Shown: positions 8,910 to 52,593, counted from the whole stretch's first letter. The stretch: 63,625 bases of DNA, filler included, from Octopus bimaculoides (GCF_001194135.2; 7 parts of 5 records of this genome joined end to end with filler, not necessarily neighbours in it); one strand, 5' to 3'. Translations and numbers: made by a program. Notes: generated by a model not told the origin, from the letters alone.

Positions 8910-11331
8910 ATTAATTTTCGAAATAGCTGATATGAAACCATATTTGCTATATAATTAAGAAGGAACCTAATCTTTTCTCTTTAAGATAGAAATAACATTA
9001 ACTTAATAAGAAAAGATAGAATACATTCTAAAGTTTTGTATATTTTTATGATCATCATGAAGTTTCAGATGAATAAAAGTATATTAATTGTTCNNNNNNN
9101 NNNNNNNNNNNNNNNNNNNNNNNNNNNNNNNNNNNNNNNNNNNNNNNNNNNNNNNNNNNNNNNNNNNNNNNNNNNNNNNNNNNNNNNNNNNNNNNNNNNN
9201 NNNNNNNNNNNNNNNNNNNNNNNNNNNNNNNNNNNNNNNNNNNNNNNNNNNNNNNNNNNNNNNNNNNNNNNNNNNNNNNNNNNNNNNNNNNNNNNNNNNN
9301 NNNNNNNNNNNNNNNNNNNNNNNNNNNNNNNNNNNNNNNNNNNNNNNNNNNNNNNNNNNNNNNNNNNNNNNNNNNNNNNNNNNNNNNNNNNNNNNNNNNN
9401 NNNNNNNNNNNNNNNNNNNNNNNNNNNNNNNNNNNNNNNNNNNNNNNNNNNNNNNNNNNNNNNNNNNNNNNNNNNNNNNNNNNNNNNNNNNNNNNNNNNN
9501 NNNNNNNNNNNTTGAAATATAACGAAGAATTTCTTTGTTGTCTTATTTTGAGCATGGGAATTTGTTTTCATGCAATATATTTTCAAAGATTGGATGGTTT
9601 TAACATCCAAGCTAAAAAATTTTTTTTTAGTTTAAAAATATGCCTGATTTGTGACCTAAAGAGTCTATTTCAAACTGTCTCTGCCTTCTAAATGTACTTT
9701 TTAAAAAATTTTAAATTTGTTTCTTTTATGTTATCATAGAAGCATGAAAGAAGTTTTGGCTGACTTAAAATTTAAATAATTTCAATTAGTTTGCTGATAA
9801 ATAACTAAAAATCAGCCTCTGGCTTTGTACCTATTTTTATATAATAATGCTTTCAATAAATTTATTTATTTATTGTAATATTTTGCTTATATTTCTTATA
9901 TCCTTCCATTAATGAAACTGCCAGGTTTATTTCTGAATTTTGTTTTGATTTTTTTCTTTGTAGAATCTCTTGCTAACATAATTTCCATGCAACAAATGCA
10001 TAATCTATGAATGTGTTGATGTTTGTATTTATGTGTGTGACTTTTTTGAAAAAAAATAATTGCTAGTGTATAAATCTCCAACACCAGAAAGTTAAGGTTT
10101 ATATATGACATTGGATTCTTTATATTATTGACATTGGATATTTGTTGCTTGTTTCATTTTTCATGTTGATCTCTTAAGATTTACTCTAGTGTCTTAGGAG
10201 ATAATGAACAGAAACCAAGGAATAACAGTTAAAACAAACCCTGTGATATTTATTCAGTCCAAGGCTAGTTATGTATTCTATTACTCATTTAATATGGGAA
10301 TCCATGTACCAAATGAATAAACAATGGAAATATTTAAGTCTCTTCTAATATGTTTTGTTTATTTATTACTGCTTTTTTTTTTACTAAATTAGATTAAAAT
10401 AGAGCATTTTTATTAGTGTTAAAAACTGAATTTTGGTTGGTGTGTTCCATAGTTATTTTCATGTAACAGTTCATCATTATCACTGATAGTGTACGTTGTT
10501 GTTGTTTAACCTCAGGTCAGTTCTATTTAAGCAGACCTATAACCAATCCTGTCTTGACCATCCTGTCTTTTTGTATATTCATGAATATATTATCCAATGT
10601 GTTCTCATTTGAAGGTGGTTGGGTGTGATTTGAGCAAGATTTGGCCACTATTTCTAGCAGGTTCAACCACTGCACATAAGCTTCTCACATTTGGCTTATT
10701 AGATTATATCTTTCTATATTGCTACAACTTTTCAGTTGTCTTCATTCCTCTTGAGATTTTGCACACAGCAAAACTTCTTCAAACCGTAAATAAAAGATTT
10801 TTTAAAATCTTCATTTCCTTATTTTGCTCTTGGCTAGAGATTGCAGTATACTCTTATATTGACTTTTACCTCTGATAAGCCTCTTTTTAACTAATCCCAA
10901 GTCAGTTTGTTTATTTAAGTCAACACCCAGACACACAGCAGTATAGATAATTATCTGTGGGAATTTGAAGAAACTTAGTATTAATTTGTTTTGAGTAAAT
11001 GTTTTAGGTTTGGCTGTTTCATAAGCACATTTGTCTTAATTGCAGTACTAGAAGCTATGTGCATGAGTGATAAGGTGTAGGGAGGTTTAAGCATGTGATT
11101 TGGTTCTAAATTCAGAGTTTATTGGAAAAGTTTAAAATATGGTGCTGAGACTGATTGAACATATAGAAAACTAATTAAAACTGATAGTTACCAGAAGAGA
11201 TGTAAATAATTCTGTTGTGTAAAGGGGAAGTGACTTCATTGGTTGCAAGAGGAGTGAATAAATAAGGAATGCAATTGGTGCATAAGAATCTAATAAAATA
11301 TCAAATACTCTTACAAGGTTTCTATTTTATA

Positions 11332-45293: not shown

Positions 45294-45445
<152 letters not shown>

Positions 45446-45915: not shown

Positions 45916-45987
45916 AGTTCTGTTAAAGTGGGAAGATTTCGGAATGTTTCTAATTTGATTTCTTTGATATTATTACCACGCAAATTC
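45916..45987 (-). CDS. LRR exon 7: NLRGNNIKEIKLETFRNLPTLTE(L)
   Basis: ttatttatgacag acceptor, GTGAGT donor, 72 nt. Confidence 0.9.
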
Positions 45988-46981
45988 CTGTCATAAATAA
46001 TTGTGTGAAATAAAATTATAAGATGGCGATAATGAAGCAGAATTAAAACAAGTTGTAGAATTAACTGAACTGAAAGATAAATGAAAGGATTAAATGAAGA
46101 AAATTAAAGATGGGAAATAAATAGGTGCAGGAGAAAAGACAGAAAAGATGGAGATGATGATTAAGAAGAAGAAGACGGCGGAGGAGGGGGAGGAGGGGGA
46201 GTAGGGAGGAAATGCAAAAGAAAGAAGAGGGAGAAAAATAATAAGAAAAAATAAGGAGAAGGAGGAGTAGGAGAAAAGGGTGGAGTAACAGAAGCAAGAA
46301 GAGTATGAAAAAAAGAAGAAAAATAATATGCAAAAGCAAGAAAAGCGAAAAAAAAAAGGGAAGAAAAAAGACAAAATAGAACAAGGGAGTGTAGAAAATT
46401 AAGAAGACGAAATAGAAGCAGGAAAATAAGAAGAATAAGTTTAAGAAGGAGAATAGTAGTAGTGGAAGGAGGAATATTTGAAAGAAAGTAGAAAATGGAC
46501 AAGTCAAACGCGAGAAAGAGCGAGGAGGTGGAAAAGAAGTCTAAAATACATTCATATTAATAATGTACTCCTAAAATATGCAATTACTAGGGAGAGCCAT
46601 GGATGGTAAACAACGTTGTTCGAGATATAAACAAAGTAAATCATATACAGATAGAAACAGAAACACAAATAGATACACTCTTAGAGATTCGCTTATAAAA
46701 AAGATACACAGAGACACAGACAGAGACACACACACAGATATATATATATATATATATTCATGTACCTAAACAAAATGCTATACGTACCAATGCATTTATA
46801 TTCAGACACACTCACAGACACTCTTATTTACAGGCATTCACAAACAATCACAGATTTCTATCTGAGGAGATTGAGAATGTAAAGAGATGCAAGGTCGGTA
46901 CGCATTACAAAAAAGGGAAATATTTAATACTTAGTAATATATTCTCAATGAAATATTTTCAACAAGACTTAGCCAACTTAC

Positions 46982-47053
46982 AGATATCTTAAACTGGGAA
47001 GCTCATCAAAAGTTCCTACTTGGATTTTCTCGATTTTATTTTCATTCAAATGT
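46982..47053 (-). CDS. LRR exon 6: HLNENKIEKIQVGTFDELPSLRY(L)
   Basis: ctaacattttatattacag acceptor (with CTAAC branch motif), GTAAGT donor, 72 nt. Confidence 0.9.
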
Positions 47054-47790
47054 CTGTAATATAAAATGTTAGTTGATGAGGTTATCTAGAGAGGATTATT
47101 GTAAAATATTATCAGCAAATGTTTATAAAATATAATGTAAGACGACGAGAAGTGTTTTCTGATGAACTGTAAAATATTGTTAGAAANNNNNNNNNNNNNN
47201 NNNNNNNNNNNNNNNNNNNNNNNNNNNNNNNNNNNNNNNNNNNNNNNNNNNNNNNNNNNNNNNNNNNNNNNNNNNNNNNNNNNNNNNNNNNNNNNNNNNN
47301 NNNNNNNNNNNNNNNNNNNNNNNNNNNNNNNNNNNNNNNNNNNNNNNNNNNNNNNNNNNNNNNNNNNNNNNNNNNNNNNNNNNNNNNNNNNNNNNNNNNN
47401 NNNNNNNNNNNNNNNNNNNNNNNNNNNNNNNNNNNNNNNNNNNNNNNNNNNNNNNNNNNNNNNNNNNNNNNNNNNNNNNNNNNNNNNNNNNNNNNNNNNN
47501 NNNNNNNNNNNNNNNNNNNNNNNNNNNNNNNNNNNNNNNNNNNNNNNNNNNNNNNNNNNNNNNNNNNNNNNNNNNNNNNNNNNNNNNNNNNNNNNNNNNN
47601 NNNNNNNNNNNNNNNNNNNNNNNNNNNNNNNNNNNNNNNNNNNNNNNNNNNNNNNNNNNNNNNNNNNNNNNNNNNNNNNNNNNNNNNNNNNNNNNNNNNN
47701 NNNGAGGAAGATTAAAATGAAATATGGGGACTCATTACATATTTAGCTATATATCGTCATTGAAGTAATATAAAAAAATATTTAACTTAC

Positions 47791-47862
47791 AGTTTTGTCA
47801 ATTTAGATAGACTTCGGAATGCGTTTACTTTGATTTCTTTGAGATTATTATCACCCAAATTC
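47791..47862 (-). CDS. LRR exon 5: NLGDNNLKEIKVNAFRSLSKLTK(L)
   Basis: tttttgacag acceptor, GTAAGT donor, 72 nt. Confidence 0.9.
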
Positions 47863-48252
47863 CTGTCAAAAATAATTAAGTGGAATAGAATTTGTAAGGA
47901 GCTGATTCGTGATGAAAAAAGGAACAAACAGAATTGAGGAGAAACGTGATATGATAGAAATTAGATTGGAAAAAGTTTAAAATTTGAAAAAAAGAAGATG
48001 TAGTAAATGGAAGAGAAAAGGAGACCGAAAAAAAATCGTAGAAGGGTGGGTGGGGTTGGAGTAGAAGGAAACCAAAGAGAAGAAAGAGAAAAAACAAGGG
48101 GACAGAAGAAGATACACATCAACAGAAAGGAAGTAGATGAAGAAAAGAAAGAAAGGAAGAAAGAAGAAGAAAGAGTAAAGGAAGAACACAAACACCGAAA
48201 CAGTCATACCCAGCCACATAAATACACACACTCAAAGCGAACACATGAGATT

Positions 48253-48340
<88 letters not shown>

Positions 48341-49194
48341 AGAGAGAATCAAAGAGAGAGGTTCACAAACATAGGTTCAAGGTCTCAGGTCTGAGGCACA
48401 CACGAACATACATGCACGTGCATGTACAGTGATCCCCACTCAGAAACATTCACGAAGACACCAATGGCAAGAGAATAATAAGAAGGATTTGGGTAGAGAT
48501 TTAGAGAGAGATGGCCACGGAATATAGAAATAGAATTGATGGAATCTCATAAGAAAAGCAGATCAAGAAGGAAATGAAGGAGGAAAAAAGAAGAAGAAAA
48601 AGGACAACAGTAACAACCAGAAGAAATAGAAGAAGCACAGTCTATTCAGCTGTAGGTGTAAACACCGCACATGTTATACAGAACAAGTTACACAGACATT
48701 TTGATACACACGCACATGCACACAAAAACAGAGAAAGACACACACATATTTATATATATGCATACATACAAACATACATACAAACATACATACACACACA
48801 CACATATAGATATATGCATAAAGCCATTTGCTGTAATGTTTTCCGTTAATTGTCACACACTCATATATTTCATATCCAAGGAATAGGCCCTCAATTACAC
48901 TCACAGACATTAACAGACATTAACATACAAAAAGATACAGTTTCAATACGGACAGATTTTACAAATAGACAAGAACATACACAAGCATGCACTAAAGGAA
49001 TCCCCTAATCTATCACGCTCTTATGCATCTCAGATCTAATAAATGGGAACATACTCAGACATCCAGATTTTCAGACAATAAAGCACATCTTTGGAATAAC
49101 GAGTGAGGTAGCTTAAAATGAAGGACAGCAAGATATTAAAGATTTAGAAATATGTTGCAAATGAAATCGTTTCAAGAAGACTTATTCAACTTAC

Positions 49195-49248
49195 ACATAT
49201 TGTACACTGGAGAGATCTCGGAAGGTATCTTCTTTGATTTCTACGATG
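49195..49248 (-). CDS. LRR exon 4 (5' ~18 nt hidden in the N gap): IVEIKEDTFRDLSSVQY(V)
   Basis: GTAAGT donor at 49194, in register with the other LRR exons. Confidence 0.85.
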
Positions 49249-50328
49249 NNNNNNNNNNNNNNNNNNNNNNNNNNNNNNNNNNNNNNNNNNNNNNNNNNNN
49301 NNNNNNNNNNNNNNNNNNNNNNNNNNNNNNNNNNNNNNNNNNNNNNNNNNNNNNNNNNNNNNNNNNNNNNNNNNNNNNNNNNNNNNNNNNNNNNNNNNNN
49401 NNNNNNNNNNNNNNNNNNNNNNNNNNNNNNNNNNNNNNNNNNNNNNNNNNNNNNNNNNNNNNNNNNNNNNNNNNNNNNNNNNNNNNNNNNNNNNNNNNNN
49501 NNNNNNNNNNNNNNNNNNNNNNNNNNNNNNNNNNNNNNNNNNNNNNNNNNNNNNNNNNNNNNNNNNNNNNNNNNNNNNNNNNNNNNNNNNNNNNNNNNNN
49601 NNNNNNNNNNNNNNNNNNNNNNNNNNNNNNNNNNNNNNNNNNNNNNNNNNNNNNNNNNNNNNNNNNNNNNNNNNNNNNNNNNNNNNNNNNNNNNNNNNNN
49701 NNNNNNNNNNNNNNNNNNNNNNNNNNNNNNNNNNNNNNNNNNNNNNNNNNNNNNNNNNNNNNNNNNNNNNNNNNNNNNNNNNNNNNNNNNNNNNNNNNNN
49801 NNNNNNNNNNNNNNNNNNNNNNNNNNNNNNNNNNNNNNNNNNNNNNNNNNNNNNNNNNNNNNNNNNNNNNNNNNNNNNNNNNNNNNNNNNNNNNNNNNNN
49901 NNNNNNNNNNNNNNNNNNNNNNNNNNNNNNNNNNNNNNNNNNNNNNNNNNNNNNNNNNNNNNNNNNNNNNNNNNNNNGAGAATGAAAATGTCATCACATC
50001 ACATCACATCTTCATATATTTCAAATCCAAGGAACAAATCATCACTCATATTCATAGACATCAACATATAAAACATTCAATTTTGACAGAGACAAATTTT
50101 CGAAAAGCATGCACTAAATGATTTCCCTGAACTATCACGCACCCATACATCGCATGTCTAATAAATGGACACACTCCGATGCACACAGATCCACAAACAA
50201 TAATATTTCACAGATAAAAACATCATTGAAAAGAGTGGTGAGGGAATCTAAAATGAAGGATGTCAAGATATTACAGATTTAGAAATATATCTTTAATGAA
50301 ATCCTATAAAATGTCTTACTCAACTTAC

Positions 50329-50400
50329 AGATATATTAAACTGTAGAGATTCCGGAAGATGTCTTCTTTGAGTTCAACGATGTTATTAGAACCCAAGTAT
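50329..50400 (-). CDS. LRR exon 3: YLGSNNIVELKEDIFRNLYSLIY(L)
   Basis: ttttctgttccag acceptor, GTAAGT donor, 72 nt. Confidence 0.9.
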
Positions 50401-51027
50401 CTGGAACAGAAAACGGAGTCAATAAGAAATTGCATGGAACATATTTGTGACAAAATTTGCTTTCGATCATCAGAGAATGGAAGCGATGGAAAGTAGAATA
50501 TGATGATGATTAATTCCATAAAGTTCATGGCGCTGGTGATGATGTTCATGATGATGATGATAATTATGATGATGTGGAGGAGGCGGACCTGCAGTAGAAG
50601 GATGATGGTAGCGGTAGAGTTGATAGCGGATGTTTTGGCGGTGGTTGTGATGAATATGGAGAAGAGACAGTAGGGAAGAGTATATAGTAGATCTGTTAAT
50701 GACTATGATGTTATGGTTCTCAAGATGACGAACTCGAAGAAGTTTATCATTGAGGAAGGTGAGGAATAAAATGAGAAGTATGACGACGATGAGGACATGG
50801 ACCAGGACGTCGACAATTTTCTAAGCAGATCTGGTTTCGATTTACATTGAATAAGATTTAGACGAATAGAGAATCGAAAAGAGAAAGGAGAAACTATAAA
50901 AAAGCATGAGAAAAAGGAAGTGAAAAACAAAGAAAGGAGGAGGATGAGCAGAAGAAAAATGAAGCGGAAGAATTATAGAAGAAGAAGAACGAGAAAAAAG
51001 AAGAAGGAGAAGAAGGAGAAGAAGTAA

Positions 51028-51083
<56 letters not shown>

Positions 51084-51332
51084 AAGGAAGAAGAGCTTGA
51101 ATGGATAAGAACTATCGGGGTTGGGTGGAAAGGAAATGTTTTACATGCCAATATATATTCAGATTCGTACACAGATACATATTTACAGACACAATCAATC
51201 ACACATTTCTACCAAAAGACCGTGAGAATGTAGCGAGGGACAAGGACCTGGATCGAAAAAGAATGGGGAGATTTTAAAGATTTAGTAGAACATTATCTGT
51301 GAAATATTATCAACAAGCTTTATCCAACTCAC

Positions 51333-51404
51333 AGTGTTTGCAATTTGGTCAGGTCATGGAAGGCTGTTTCGTCAATTTTTTCGATACCATTATTGTGCAA
51401 ATAT
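51333..51404 (-). CDS. LRR exon 2: YLHNNGIEKIDETAFHDLTKLQT(L)
   Basis: ttttctgttacag acceptor, GTGAGT donor, 72 nt. Confidence 0.9.
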
Positions 51405-51622
51405 CTGTAACAGAAAATATTAATTGACAGGAGAAAGTATCGAAGAGTTGTATAACATAAAATGTTATCGTTAAACGAATATTTGGTGGAAGAAAAAGCA
51501 AAGTAGATAATGGTGATGGTAATAAGGAGGAGGAGTAAGAGTAGGATGGAGGTGGTGGTGCTGGTAATGATGAATATGGCGATGAGACGAAAGATAGGAG
51601 GTCGATGGTAATGTTGATGAAG

Positions 51623-51827
51623 ATAATCCTTTTTATTATAAGCACAAGACCTGAAATTTGGGGAAGGCAGGTAGACTATTACATCGACCCCAGTACTCAA
51701 ATGTTACGTCTCGAAAGGATGAAAGGTGAAGTCGAACTCGGTGGAAATTGAACTGAGAACGTAACGACGGGCAAAATACCGCTAAGCATTTCGCCTGGCG
51801 TGCTAAGGATGCTGCTTGCTCGCCGCT
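51623..51827 (-). mobile_element. Family A SINE inside an LRR-gene intron
   Basis: Head, core and tail present. Confidence 0.8.
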
Positions 51828-52521
51828 TTGATGAAGGTCATATTATTAATAGCGATTATGATGAAGGTGATATTTGTAATAGTGATGTTGATGAGGAGAA
51901 CTACGGTGATGCTGACGATGATTTTGATGATGATTGTGCTGCTGGTGACGTTTCTGTTGAAGATGATGATGTATAGATCGATAACGATAGTTTCGACGGT
52001 CATGTAGATTGTGCAAATGTTTGTGAGATTGATAATATTGATGATGAAACTGATCATGAAGAATTGAAAATATAAAACAATAGGTAGAAAGATTATGTGA
52101 AAGTCGAGGCAACGGAATAAAGTGAAGGAAGAGCTCGGATAAAATTTTAAAGGGTGTAGGAGAAAAAAGATGATGAAGAGACAGAAGAGATGGAGTGGGA
52201 TGCAGTAGAAGATAAAGAAAAAGAGAAACAGGCCCTCACTCACATTCACAGACATAAACATACAAAAAAAAACATTTTGGACAGATAGAGATTTTAGACA
52301 TAGAAACATATATATGCATGCACTAAATGATTCCGCTGAACTATCACGCCCTCATTCATCTCATAAATACACACACACACTTAGACATAGATTCACCAAC
52401 AAGAAGGCACATATTTGGAAAGACGGTGAGGTGGAGGGCTTAAAATGGAGGATGGTAACATATTACTGATTTAGAAATATATCGCCAATGAAATCCTATA
52501 AAAAAGACTTATTCAACTTAC

Positions 52522-52593
52522 AGATTTGTTAAACTGGACAGACTTCGGAAGGTGTCTGCTTTGATTTCTCTTATATTATTATCACTCAAGTAT
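52522..52593 (-). CDS. LRR exon 1: YLSDNNIREIKADTFRSLSSLTN(L)
   Basis: ttttatgttccag acceptor, GTAAGT donor, 72 nt, phase 2-2, typical LRR LxLxxNxIxxIxxxxFxxLxxL. Confidence 0.9.

What the first reader, a model, noticed from the sequence alone, without database searches (positions are those of the whole stretch)
45916..52593. Hidden array of seven duplicated single-LRR cassette exons on the minus strand
Seen: a divergent ~1.0-1.4-kb repeat through low-complexity DNA resolves into seven 72-nt exons (one partly hidden in an N gap), all phase 2-2, with GTAAGT/GTGAGT donors, pyrimidine-rich acceptors where visible, and no stops. They splice into consecutive 24-aa typical LRRs. Established: one-LRR-per-72-nt phase-2 exon is the architecture of LGR/RXFP-type receptors, and GRL101-like LGRs are reported as expanded in octopus. 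Inference: this is the ectodomain of such a receptor or of another LRR sensor. Because every exon is symmetric, any subset splices in frame, so combinatorial LRR isoforms are possible. No signal peptide, LDLa, LRRCT or 7TM exon was recognised in the window.
Basis: partly seen in the sequence, partly recalled or inferred. Interest (0 to 1): 0.75.

Follow-up and report, generated by a model that had tools for sequence, protein, structure and literature searches.

The report
Octopus single-LRR cassette exon array
The seven small exons are real and each encodes one leucine-rich repeat, but they belong to an octopus-specific receptor-like gene family related to adhesion GPCRs, not to hormone-receptor (LGR/relaxin-type) genes; annotated relatives already mix and match such exons by alternative splicing.

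Summary
The minus strand carries six complete AG|72 nt|GT(A/G)AGT exons and one exon whose first 18 nt lie in an N gap. All are phase 2-2, only one frame is open, and each encodes one 24-residue typical LRR. None occur on the other strand or in 200 shuffles.

The LGR/RXFP/GRL101 reading is not supported. The closest relatives are Octopus proteins (55-59% identity). Their gene in O. bimaculoides (locus L001) has the same one-LRR-per-72-nt exon plan and shares intron sequence with the window (65-78%). This family shares its non-LRR ectodomain modules with Octopus 'adhesion GPCR G6-like' proteins (HRM-GAIN-GPS-7tm_2). That matches the octopus-specific adhesion-GPCR expansion described by Ritschard et al. 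2019.

Scaffold positions of the repeats are under purifying selection (pN 0.04 vs pS 0.58). Exposed positions evolve freely (pN 0.37 vs pS 0.31). The exons have no indels, unlike the introns.

The combinatorial-splicing idea has support in paralogues. One O. sinensis gene has 13 RefSeq isoforms that differ by whole 24-aa LRR cassettes. Expression of this particular array, its gene ends and any 7TM region could not be tested. I rate it a new member of a known kind, of moderate interest.

The parts
52522..52593 (-). E1, 72-nt phase 2-2 exon, one LRR (YLSDNNIREIKADTFRSLSSLTN|L), type A
   Evidence: 89% nt identity to the LRR exon at L001:76535
51333..51404 (-). E2, 72-nt exon, one LRR (YLHNNGIEKIDETAFHDLTKLQT|L), type B, GTGAGT donor
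   Evidence: closest to L001:5541 at 75%
50329..50400 (-). E3, 72-nt exon, one LRR (YLGSNNIVELKEDIFRNLYSLIY|L), type A
49195..49248 (-). E4, the visible 54 nt of a type-A LRR exon (…IVEIKEDTFRDLSSVQY|V); predicted start at 49266 lies inside the N gap
   Evidence: ungapped 80% identity to E3
47791..47862 (-). E5, 72-nt exon, one LRR (NLGDNNLKEIKVNAFRSLSKLTK|L), type C
46982..47053 (-). E6, 72-nt exon, one LRR (HLNENKIEKIQVGTFDELPSLRY|L), type B'
   Evidence: 86% and 85% nt identity to L001:38884 and L001:27666; shares IEKIQVGTFD with P0164
45916..45987 (-). E7, 72-nt exon, one LRR (NLRGNNIKEIKLETFRNLPTLTE|L), type C, GTGAGT donor
   Evidence: 82% to L001:78362
49249..49977 (.). Assembly gap that hides the 5' 18 nt and the acceptor of E4 and most of the E3-E4 intron
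47187..47703 (.). Assembly gap inside the E5-E6 intron
51620..51831 (-). Interspersed SINE-like repeat inserted in the E1-E2 intron; not part of the duplicated unit
   Evidence: blastn finds many copies in both orientations in L002, L003 and L004

Best explanation
This piece is an internal segment of an octopus gene for a secreted or membrane LRR ectodomain. The gene belongs to the lineage-specific Octopus family that RefSeq labels inconsistently (toll-like receptor 5, chaoptin, slit-like, decorin-like, adhesion GPCR G6-like).

Full-length members of the family read signal peptide, LRRNT, a variable number of LRRs, an LRRCT-like/Cys-rich region, HRM, GAIN/GPS and 7tm_2. Each LRR is one 72-nt phase-2 exon. 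The array grew by tandem duplication of exon-plus-intron units of three subtypes that are shared with paralogous loci.

Selection has kept exon length, splice sites and the hydrophobic/Asn scaffold intact, while the exposed residues have diverged. Because every exon is symmetric and ends in CT, any subset splices into a continuous solenoid. By analogy with annotated paralogues, the exons probably act as alternatively included cassettes that vary the length and surface of the binding domain.

Shown: the exons, the family relationship, the selection pattern, and cassette isoforms in paralogues. Inferred: expression and alternative splicing of this array, and what lies 5' and 3' of it, including whether a 7TM region is attached.
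For: Exons and controls.

Protein similarity: Pfam LRR_8 at 5.8e-40. Best identities are to Octopus P0165 (59% over 90 aa) and P0164 (56% and 54%).

Shared gene plan: P0164's gene in O. bimaculoides (L001) carries 20 AG|72|GT LRR exons on one strand and none on the other. Its LRRs map almost all one-to-one to 72-nt exons.

Intron homology: the window's exon-plus-intron units match L001 units at 65-78% over 300-680 bp. Corresponding exons reach 82-89%.

Link to adhesion GPCRs: relatives P0169, P0177 and P0189 have LRR_8, GPS and 7tm_2, and HRM and GAIN are also found in P0177. Homologous non-LRR ectodomain exons are present in L001. A full-length gene (L002) uses the same 72-nt LRR exons. An LRR-only gene lies inside the range of a same-strand gene whose product has GPS and 7tm_2.

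Selection: at consensus positions there are 2 nonsynonymous and 8 synonymous changes (binomial P=1.5e-4). At variable positions pN 0.37 vs pS 0.31. There are no exon indels where 8.4 are expected at the intron rate (P=2e-4).

Cassette splicing in paralogues.

Fold: AlphaFold2 on the E4-skipped product gives a regular solenoid, with pLDDT 89 and a beta strand every 24 residues across the artificial junction.

Literature: octopus-specific adhesion-GPCR group 3 with LRRs in 5 of 22 sequences, expressed outside the brain, with octopus-specific expansions highest in axial nerve cord, suckers and skin (PMC6408891).
Against: No annotated protein or transcript containing these exact exons was found, and the window's own genomic address was not located. 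So expression, gene ends and attachment to a 7TM region are untested.

Within the array, exon pairs are no more similar than their introns (0.58-0.80 vs 0.68-0.85). That is expected under diversification but also under relaxed constraint.

In the family, models that bear 7TM/GPS have only 1-4 LRRs, while long arrays occur in models without 7TM. L001 has no GAIN/GPS/7TM exons.

The isoform evidence consists of RefSeq and GenBank annotation models, whose read support I could not inspect.
Confidence: 0.72

Rival explanations
1. Ectodomain of a rhodopsin-type LRR GPCR (LGR, RXFP/relaxin-type or GRL101-like).
For: One LRR per roughly 72-nt phase-2 exon is the plan of gonadotropin-receptor genes (PMC11378527). 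LGR4 and LGR5 ectodomains are among the best PDB matches by sequence and by fold.
Against: Those PDB matches do not discriminate: IGFALS, Nogo receptor, LINGO-1, LRRTM2, VLR, Slitrk and TLR3 score alike. The closest proteins and the only intron-level DNA homology are to the Octopus family whose 7TM members are 7tm_2/GPS. No LDLa, hinge or 7tm_1 sequence is in the piece. The claimed GRL101 expansion in octopus was not found in the literature searched.
Confidence: 0.04
2. A duplicated exon array that is no longer used, or was never used: an unannotated relic or reservoir of LRR cassettes beside a functional paralogue, transcribed little or not at all.
For: No protein containing these exons was retrieved. 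Exons within the array are not more conserved than their introns. In L003, two intact LRR exons (28668, 31667) are used by none of the 13 RefSeq isoforms, so silent intact cassettes do exist in this family.
Against: All seven frames and all visible splice sites are intact. There are no indels despite 20-45% divergence. Nonsynonymous changes are strongly depleted at scaffold positions. Exons are more conserved than introns between loci. The negative protein searches are weak evidence, because the word-index tool returned only proteins up to about twice the query length.
Confidence: 0.17
3. Part of a canonical conserved LRR gene such as Slit, chaoptin, a Toll-like receptor or a small leucine-rich proteoglycan, as the automated RefSeq names of the relatives suggest.
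For: RefSeq names of relatives include slit homolog 1/2/3-like, chaoptin, toll-like receptor 5 and decorin-like. Slit genes are cited as having modular LRR exons with potential for alternative splicing (Little et al. 2002, cited in PMC6642158).
Against: Isoforms of one and the same gene carry different names of this kind, so the names only reflect generic LRR similarity. Pfam finds no EGF, LamG, TIR or other hallmark domains in the relatives scanned. It finds HRM, GAIN, GPS and 7tm_2 instead.
Confidence: 0.04

Closest known systems
Octopus LRR-containing adhesion-GPCR-related family (RefSeq 'adhesion G-protein coupled receptor G6-like' and LRR-only paralogues such as XP_052833921.1; octopus-specific 'group 3' of Ritschard et al. 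2019, PMC6408891)
   Same: One LRR per 72-nt phase-2 exon with (C/T)T|GTAAGT donors. The same LRR flavour (N-x-I-x-E/K-I-x-x-x-x-F-x-x-L). 55-59% protein identity. Intron-level DNA homology to the O. bimaculoides locus L001. Exon subtypes are shared across loci.
   Different: The window's exons are not identical to any fetched locus or protein. No LRRNT, LRRCT, HRM, GAIN, GPS or 7TM exon is in the piece. Long arrays like this one occur so far in models without a 7TM region.
LGR / RXFP / GRL101 leucine-rich-repeat GPCRs (rhodopsin family)
   Same: Typical 24-residue LRRs, roughly 72-nt phase-2 exons, and a solenoid fold (TM-score about 0.9 to LGR4).
   Different: No closer than many unrelated LRR proteins. 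There is no intron homology. The relatives of the window have a secretin/adhesion-type 7TM, not rhodopsin-type. There is no LDLa module.
Brown-algal ROCO genes with shuffled, alternatively spliced LRR exons (PMC11378527); Slit genes (Little et al. 2002, cited in PMC6642158)
   Same: 72-bp phase-2 single-LRR exons in the ROCO genes, tandem exon duplication, diversification at exposed positions, and alternative splicing that changes LRR content.
   Different: Unrelated proteins (an intracellular GTPase, a secreted guidance cue). The resemblance is one of mechanism, not of ancestry.
Arthropod Dscam1 cassette-exon arrays
   Same: Tandem arrays of duplicated, alternatively chosen exons that each encode one unit of a binding domain.
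   Different: Dscam uses Ig half-domains and strictly mutually exclusive choice. Here the annotated isoforms of paralogues vary the number as well as the identity of LRRs, and no regulation is known.

Membership tests
Octopus LRR / adhesion-GPCR-related family (P0164/P0165/P0169-like) | Each LRR is encoded by one 72-nt phase-2 exon with a (C/T)T|GTAAGT donor | tested here: met
   Window. L001 has 20 such exons, L002 has 2-3, L003 has 11 and L004 has 8, all on the coding strand only.
Octopus LRR / adhesion-GPCR-related family (P0164/P0165/P0169-like) | Closest protein similarity is to family members | tested here: met
   P0165 59% over 90 aa, P0164 56% and 54%, P0285 54%, against 40-48% for most other LRR proteins fetched.
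Octopus LRR / adhesion-GPCR-related family (P0164/P0165/P0169-like) | Non-coding (intron) homology to a family locus | tested here: met
   blastn window vs L001: 112 HSPs, with units matching at 65-78% over 300-680 bp that span exon plus intron. Only SINE or low-complexity matches to the more distant loci L002-L004.
Octopus LRR / adhesion-GPCR-related family (P0164/P0165/P0169-like) | Signal peptide plus LRRNT upstream; LRRCT-like/Cys-rich module, HRM, GAIN/GPS and 7tm_2 downstream in the same gene | not testable with these tools
   The piece ends in intron on both sides. tblastn with family LRRNT and LRRCT peptides finds nothing in the piece. The window's genomic address could not be found.
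LGR / RXFP / GRL101 (rhodopsin-type LRR GPCR) | About 72-nt phase-2 single-LRR exons | tested here: met
   The feature is shared with other families, so it is not diagnostic.
LGR / RXFP / GRL101 (rhodopsin-type LRR GPCR) | LRRs attached to a 7tm_1 domain (plus LDLa in type C); nearest relatives are LGRs | tested here: not met
   The nearest relatives carry 7tm_2 and GPS. An LRR+7tm_1 protein (P0089) is only 35% identical to the query overall (domains). There is no LDLa or 7TM coding sequence in the piece. The 7TM region of this gene itself is not available.
Slit | LRR blocks capped by LRRNT/LRRCT, followed by EGF repeats, a LamG domain and a C-terminal cystine knot | tested here: not met
   Relatives named 'slit-like' show no EGF or LamG in Pfam. 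One gene's isoforms carry several different names. The window itself cannot be tested beyond its LRRs.

The most novel reading that the evidence does not exclude
Octopuses may possess a germline-encoded combinatorial LRR diversity system. In this reading, many loci hold arrays of symmetric single-LRR cassette exons (7 to at least 20 per locus) attached to adhesion-GPCR-type ectodomains. Alternative splicing would generate large isoform repertoires with diversified concave faces. These could serve chemotactile, immune or cell-recognition functions in suckers, skin and the axial nerve cord, as an LRR analogue of Dscam1. The window's unannotated array would be one more cassette bank of this system.
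Probability: 0.25. Interest if true: 0.8.

Novelty: new member of a known kind. Interest (0 to 1): 0.52.

Why it matters
Lineage-specific receptor expansions are a leading genomic explanation for cephalopod sensory and neural novelties. This piece shows that part of that repertoire is still hidden in gap-ridden, unannotated sequence. It also shows that the family's binding domain is built from interchangeable single-repeat exons.

Annotated paralogues already show up to 13 isoforms per gene made by choosing LRR cassettes. I found no paper describing this in the library searched. If long-read data confirm it, octopus would have an LRR-based way of diversifying adhesion-GPCR-type ectodomains by splicing. 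That can be tested directly in sucker, skin and nerve-cord tissue.

It also corrects a plausible but wrong family call (LGR/GRL101). And it shows that the automated names in this family (slit, chaoptin, TLR5, decorin) should not be trusted.

Tried and rejected
1. The word-index homologue search with the joined peptide, and with a profile, returned only short unrelated LRR proteins. Every hit was no longer than about twice the query length. So the apparent absence of an annotated protein is not evidence, and I withdrew that inference.

2. The top list of the exhaustive representative search was swamped by giant multi-LRR proteins. Its one useful output was the O. bimaculoides protein P0144, which opened the family.

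3. PDB sequence search and fold search do not discriminate among LRR families.

4. ARAGORN and Rfam on the piece found nothing at threshold. The sub-threshold mir-297 hit lies in TG-rich low complexity.

5. ORF listing found only low-complexity ORFs.

6. tblastn for further LRR, LRRNT or LRRCT coding pieces in the introns and flanks found none.

7. I tried to find the window's own locus by fetching family loci. L001-L004 do not contain it. Look-ups for P0144, P0162, P0165 and P0157 were not on record.

8. The LGR/GRL101 assignment and the claim of a GRL101 expansion in octopus were checked in the literature and not supported.


Full report

Reading the piece on the minus strand and scanning it mechanically for AG|72 nt|GT with an open +1 frame recovers six complete exons. 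They are E1 52593-52522, E2 51404-51333, E3 50400-50329, E5 47862-47791, E6 47053-46982 and E7 45987-45916. A seventh exon, E4, is visible for 54 nt (49248-49195). Ungapped alignment to E1 and E3 places its start at 49266, 18 nt inside the N run.

Donors are GTAAGT in five exons and GTGAGT in two. Acceptors are T-rich tracts ending in CAG or AAG. In each exon only the +1 frame is open. Each exon ends in CT (E4 in GT), so any exon joined to any other gives Leu (or Val) at the junction.

In LRR numbering (LxxLxLxxNxIxxIxxxxFxxLxx) the intron splits the codon of the fourth residue after its second base, which is phase 2. The joined peptide hits Pfam LRR_8 at 5.8e-40.

As controls, the same scan with an LRR pattern finds six exons on the minus strand, none on the plus strand and none in 200 shuffles. 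tblastn with family LRR, LRRNT and LRRCT peptides finds no other coding piece. There are no long ORFs, tRNAs or Rfam families.

**2. The gaps**

On both sides of each gap lies same-strand sequence of the kind expected.

- Before gap 49249-49977 (in transcript order) is 351 nt of intron homologous to the introns after E1 and E4. After the gap is the body of a type-A exon.
- Before gap 47187-47703 is 87 nt that is 85% identical to the intron after E7. After it is 133 nt that aligns to the 5' flanks of three L001 exons right up to the gap edge.

With the stated gap sizes the two introns would be 1062 and 737 nt, against 932-1332 nt for the others. So no hidden exon is required, but none is excluded. 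Because all exons are phase 2-2, the frame does not depend on gap length. E4's acceptor and first six codons remain unseen. The piece ends in intron-like sequence on both sides, so seven exons is a lower bound.

**3. What the array is made of**

Exons and their flanking introns fall into three types (A: E1, E3, E4; B: E2, E6; C: E5, E7), and homology extends into the introns.

Within the array, exon pairs are no more alike (0.58-0.80) than their introns (0.68-0.85). However, the exons have no indels, whereas the introns show 2-7 gap events per 100 nt. At the intron rate, 8.4 events are expected in three independent exon pairs, giving P(0)=2e-4.

A Nei-Gojobori analysis of the three independent pairs separates the positions sharply.

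- At the eight scaffold positions (L, N, I, F): pN=0.04 vs pS=0.58, i.e. 2 nonsynonymous and 8 synonymous changes (binomial P=1.5e-4).
- At the fifteen x positions: pN=0.37 vs pS=0.31.

So the repeats have been kept as foldable LRRs while their exposed residues diverged. A decaying pseudogene would not look like this.

AlphaFold2 on the in-frame E4-skipped product (single sequence) gives a regular solenoid with pLDDT 89 and pTM 0.84. A beta strand falls every 24 residues, including across the artificial E3|E5 junction.

**4. Which family?**

PDB sequence and fold searches do not discriminate. IGFALS, LGR4/5, LRRC15, TLR3/13, LRIG1, Nogo receptor, LINGO-1, LRRTM2, VLR and Slitrk all match alike.

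The exhaustive search mostly listed giant LRR proteins but included an O. bimaculoides protein, P0144 ('chaoptin isoform X4'). Searching with P0144 brought up a large set of Octopus proteins. Many are named 'adhesion G-protein coupled receptor G6-like', and others slit-like, decorin-like, LRRC15-like or toll-like receptor 5.

Local BLAST puts P0165 (59% over 90 aa) and P0164 (56% and 54%) closest to the window's peptide. E6 shares the decapeptide IEKIQVGTFD with P0164.

P0164's gene was fetched as L001 (O. bimaculoides GCA_001194135.2, CM046629.1:10400675-10483064). Its coding strand carries 20 AG|72|GT LRR exons with CT|GTAAGT donors, and the other strand none. P0164's LRRs map almost all one-to-one to 72-nt exons (one LRR exon is 69 nt).

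The window is not this locus (best match 78% identity). But its exon-plus-intron units match many L001 units at 65-78% over 300-680 bp, and corresponding exons reach 82-89%. Shared intron sequence is evidence of recent common ancestry that generic LRR similarity cannot give.

**5. Link to adhesion GPCRs**

Pfam finds LRR_8, GPS and 7tm_2 in the relatives P0169, P0177 and P0189, with HRM and GAIN also in P0177. The non-LRR ectodomain exons of these proteins have homologues in L001 at 46-72 kb, but GAIN/GPS/7TM exons are absent there.

The full-length O. sinensis gene (L002) has a signal-peptide/LRRNT exon, then 72-nt LRR exons, then the HRM/GAIN/GPS/7TM exons. In L004 (O. bimaculoides), an LRR-only 'decorin-like' gene with eight 72-nt LRR exons lies inside the range of a same-strand gene whose product has GPS and 7tm_2.

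Models that bear 7TM/GPS have 1-4 LRRs, and models without 7TM have 7-12. Whether this long array is attached to a 7TM region is therefore open.

The literature fits. Ritschard et al. 2019 (PMC6408891) describe an octopus-specific adhesion-GPCR expansion (group 3) with LRRs in 5 of 22 sequences. [quoted passage not shown]

**6.

The 72-nt phase-2 LRR exon is indeed the plan of gonadotropin-receptor genes. It is also that of brown-algal ROCO genes (PMC11378527), and LRR exon modularity is reported for Slit genes (Little et al. 2002, cited in PMC6642158). So it does not identify a family.

I could not find the claimed report of a GRL101 expansion in octopus. PMC6573481 places the expansion in apple snails, with 0-9 genes in other lophotrochozoans. 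The cephalopod GPCR paper mentions neither LGR, relaxin nor GRL101. Together with section 4, the LGR reading is disfavoured. The fallback 'another LRR sensor' is right.

**7. Combinatorial splicing**

- One O. sinensis gene (L003, scaffold VCDQ01004985.1) has 13 RefSeq isoforms of 409, 385, 361 and 337 aa, in steps of exactly 24 aa.
- Their alignment shows different subsets of whole LRRs.
- On the DNA, the first four of eleven LRR exons are used in different isoform subsets, two others are skipped in single isoforms, and two intact exons are used by none.
- A second O. sinensis gene (525/501/477 aa) and an O. vulgaris gene (489/465/441 aa) show 24- or 48-aa gaps at several positions.
- A fourth gene has isoforms X1-X3 that each lack a different LRR.

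These are annotation models, and I could not inspect their read support. For the window's own array, expression is untested.

**8. Caveats**

The word-index homologue tool returned only proteins up to about twice the query length. My early inference that no annotated protein holds these exons is therefore withdrawn.

The species is inferred, not shown. The evidence is paralogue-level homology to O. bimaculoides and irregular N-run lengths like those in L001 and L004. An interspersed repeat is also shared with the O. sinensis and O. bimaculoides loci.

**9. Verdict**

The best explanation is an unannotated or unlocated paralogue of the Octopus LRR/adhesion-GPCR-related family. It was built by tandem exon duplication, its scaffold positions are constrained, its exposed positions diversify, and it is probably used as alternatively spliced cassettes. 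I rate it a new member of a known kind.

Interest is moderate for the piece itself. It is higher for the family-level splicing phenomenon, which I found annotated in RefSeq but did not find described in the papers searched.

Noticed in passing
window 51620-51831 (E1-E2 intron): An interspersed SINE-like element of about 210 nt, absent from the homologous introns. It has at least 15 copies in both orientations in the 77-kb O. sinensis locus L002, and further copies in L003 and L004 (72-88% identity). ARAGORN sees no tRNA in it. From memory it resembles the abundant octopus-specific SINE.
   Followed up: partly
window ~46130-46500, 47950-48200, 50880-51130 (minus strand): Each intron carries a 250-400-nt C/T-rich low-complexity tract on the transcribed strand, upstream of the next exon. 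The strand asymmetry is strong. The 46.1-46.5 kb tract matches similar tracts in several introns of L003. These could be splicing-regulatory polypyrimidine tracts or merely repeat decay.
   Followed up: no
L003 28668-28739 and 31667-31738: Two intact AG|72|GT LRR exons lie inside the annotated O. sinensis gene but are used by none of its 13 RefSeq isoforms. Hidden LRR cassettes are therefore not peculiar to the window.
   Followed up: partly
L004 (O. bimaculoides CM046629.1:784117-818307): An LRR-only 'decorin-like' gene model lies wholly inside the range of a same-strand gene whose product has GPS and 7tm_2. LRR-only models in this family may be 5' parts or alternative transcripts of adhesion-GPCR genes.
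   Followed up: partly
L001 1-10001: The upstream gene model ends at 9818, just after an LRR exon (9743-9814). P0164's model starts at 10001 without a signal peptide or LRRNT. The two models may be one long LRR array split by annotation.
   Followed up: no
RefSeq names: Isoforms of a single O. sinensis gene are named slit homolog 1-like, slit homolog 2-like, LRRC4-like and LRRC70-like. Paralogues are called chaoptin, decorin-like, toll-like receptor 5 and chondroadherin-like. The names carry no family information.
   Followed up: yes
(tool behaviour): the search for homologous proteins listed only proteins no longer than about twice the query (at most 283 aa and 335 aa for a 168-aa query). It missed P0164, which shares a 10-residue exact word. 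Negative results from short queries with this tool are therefore unreliable.
   Followed up: yes
window 45295-45444, 48253-48347, 51023-51083: Microsatellites: (ACT)50, (AGAG)24 and (AGT)20 in plus-strand notation. The sub-threshold Rfam mir-297 hit at 48747-48819 lies in TG-rich low complexity and is taken as chance.
   Followed up: no
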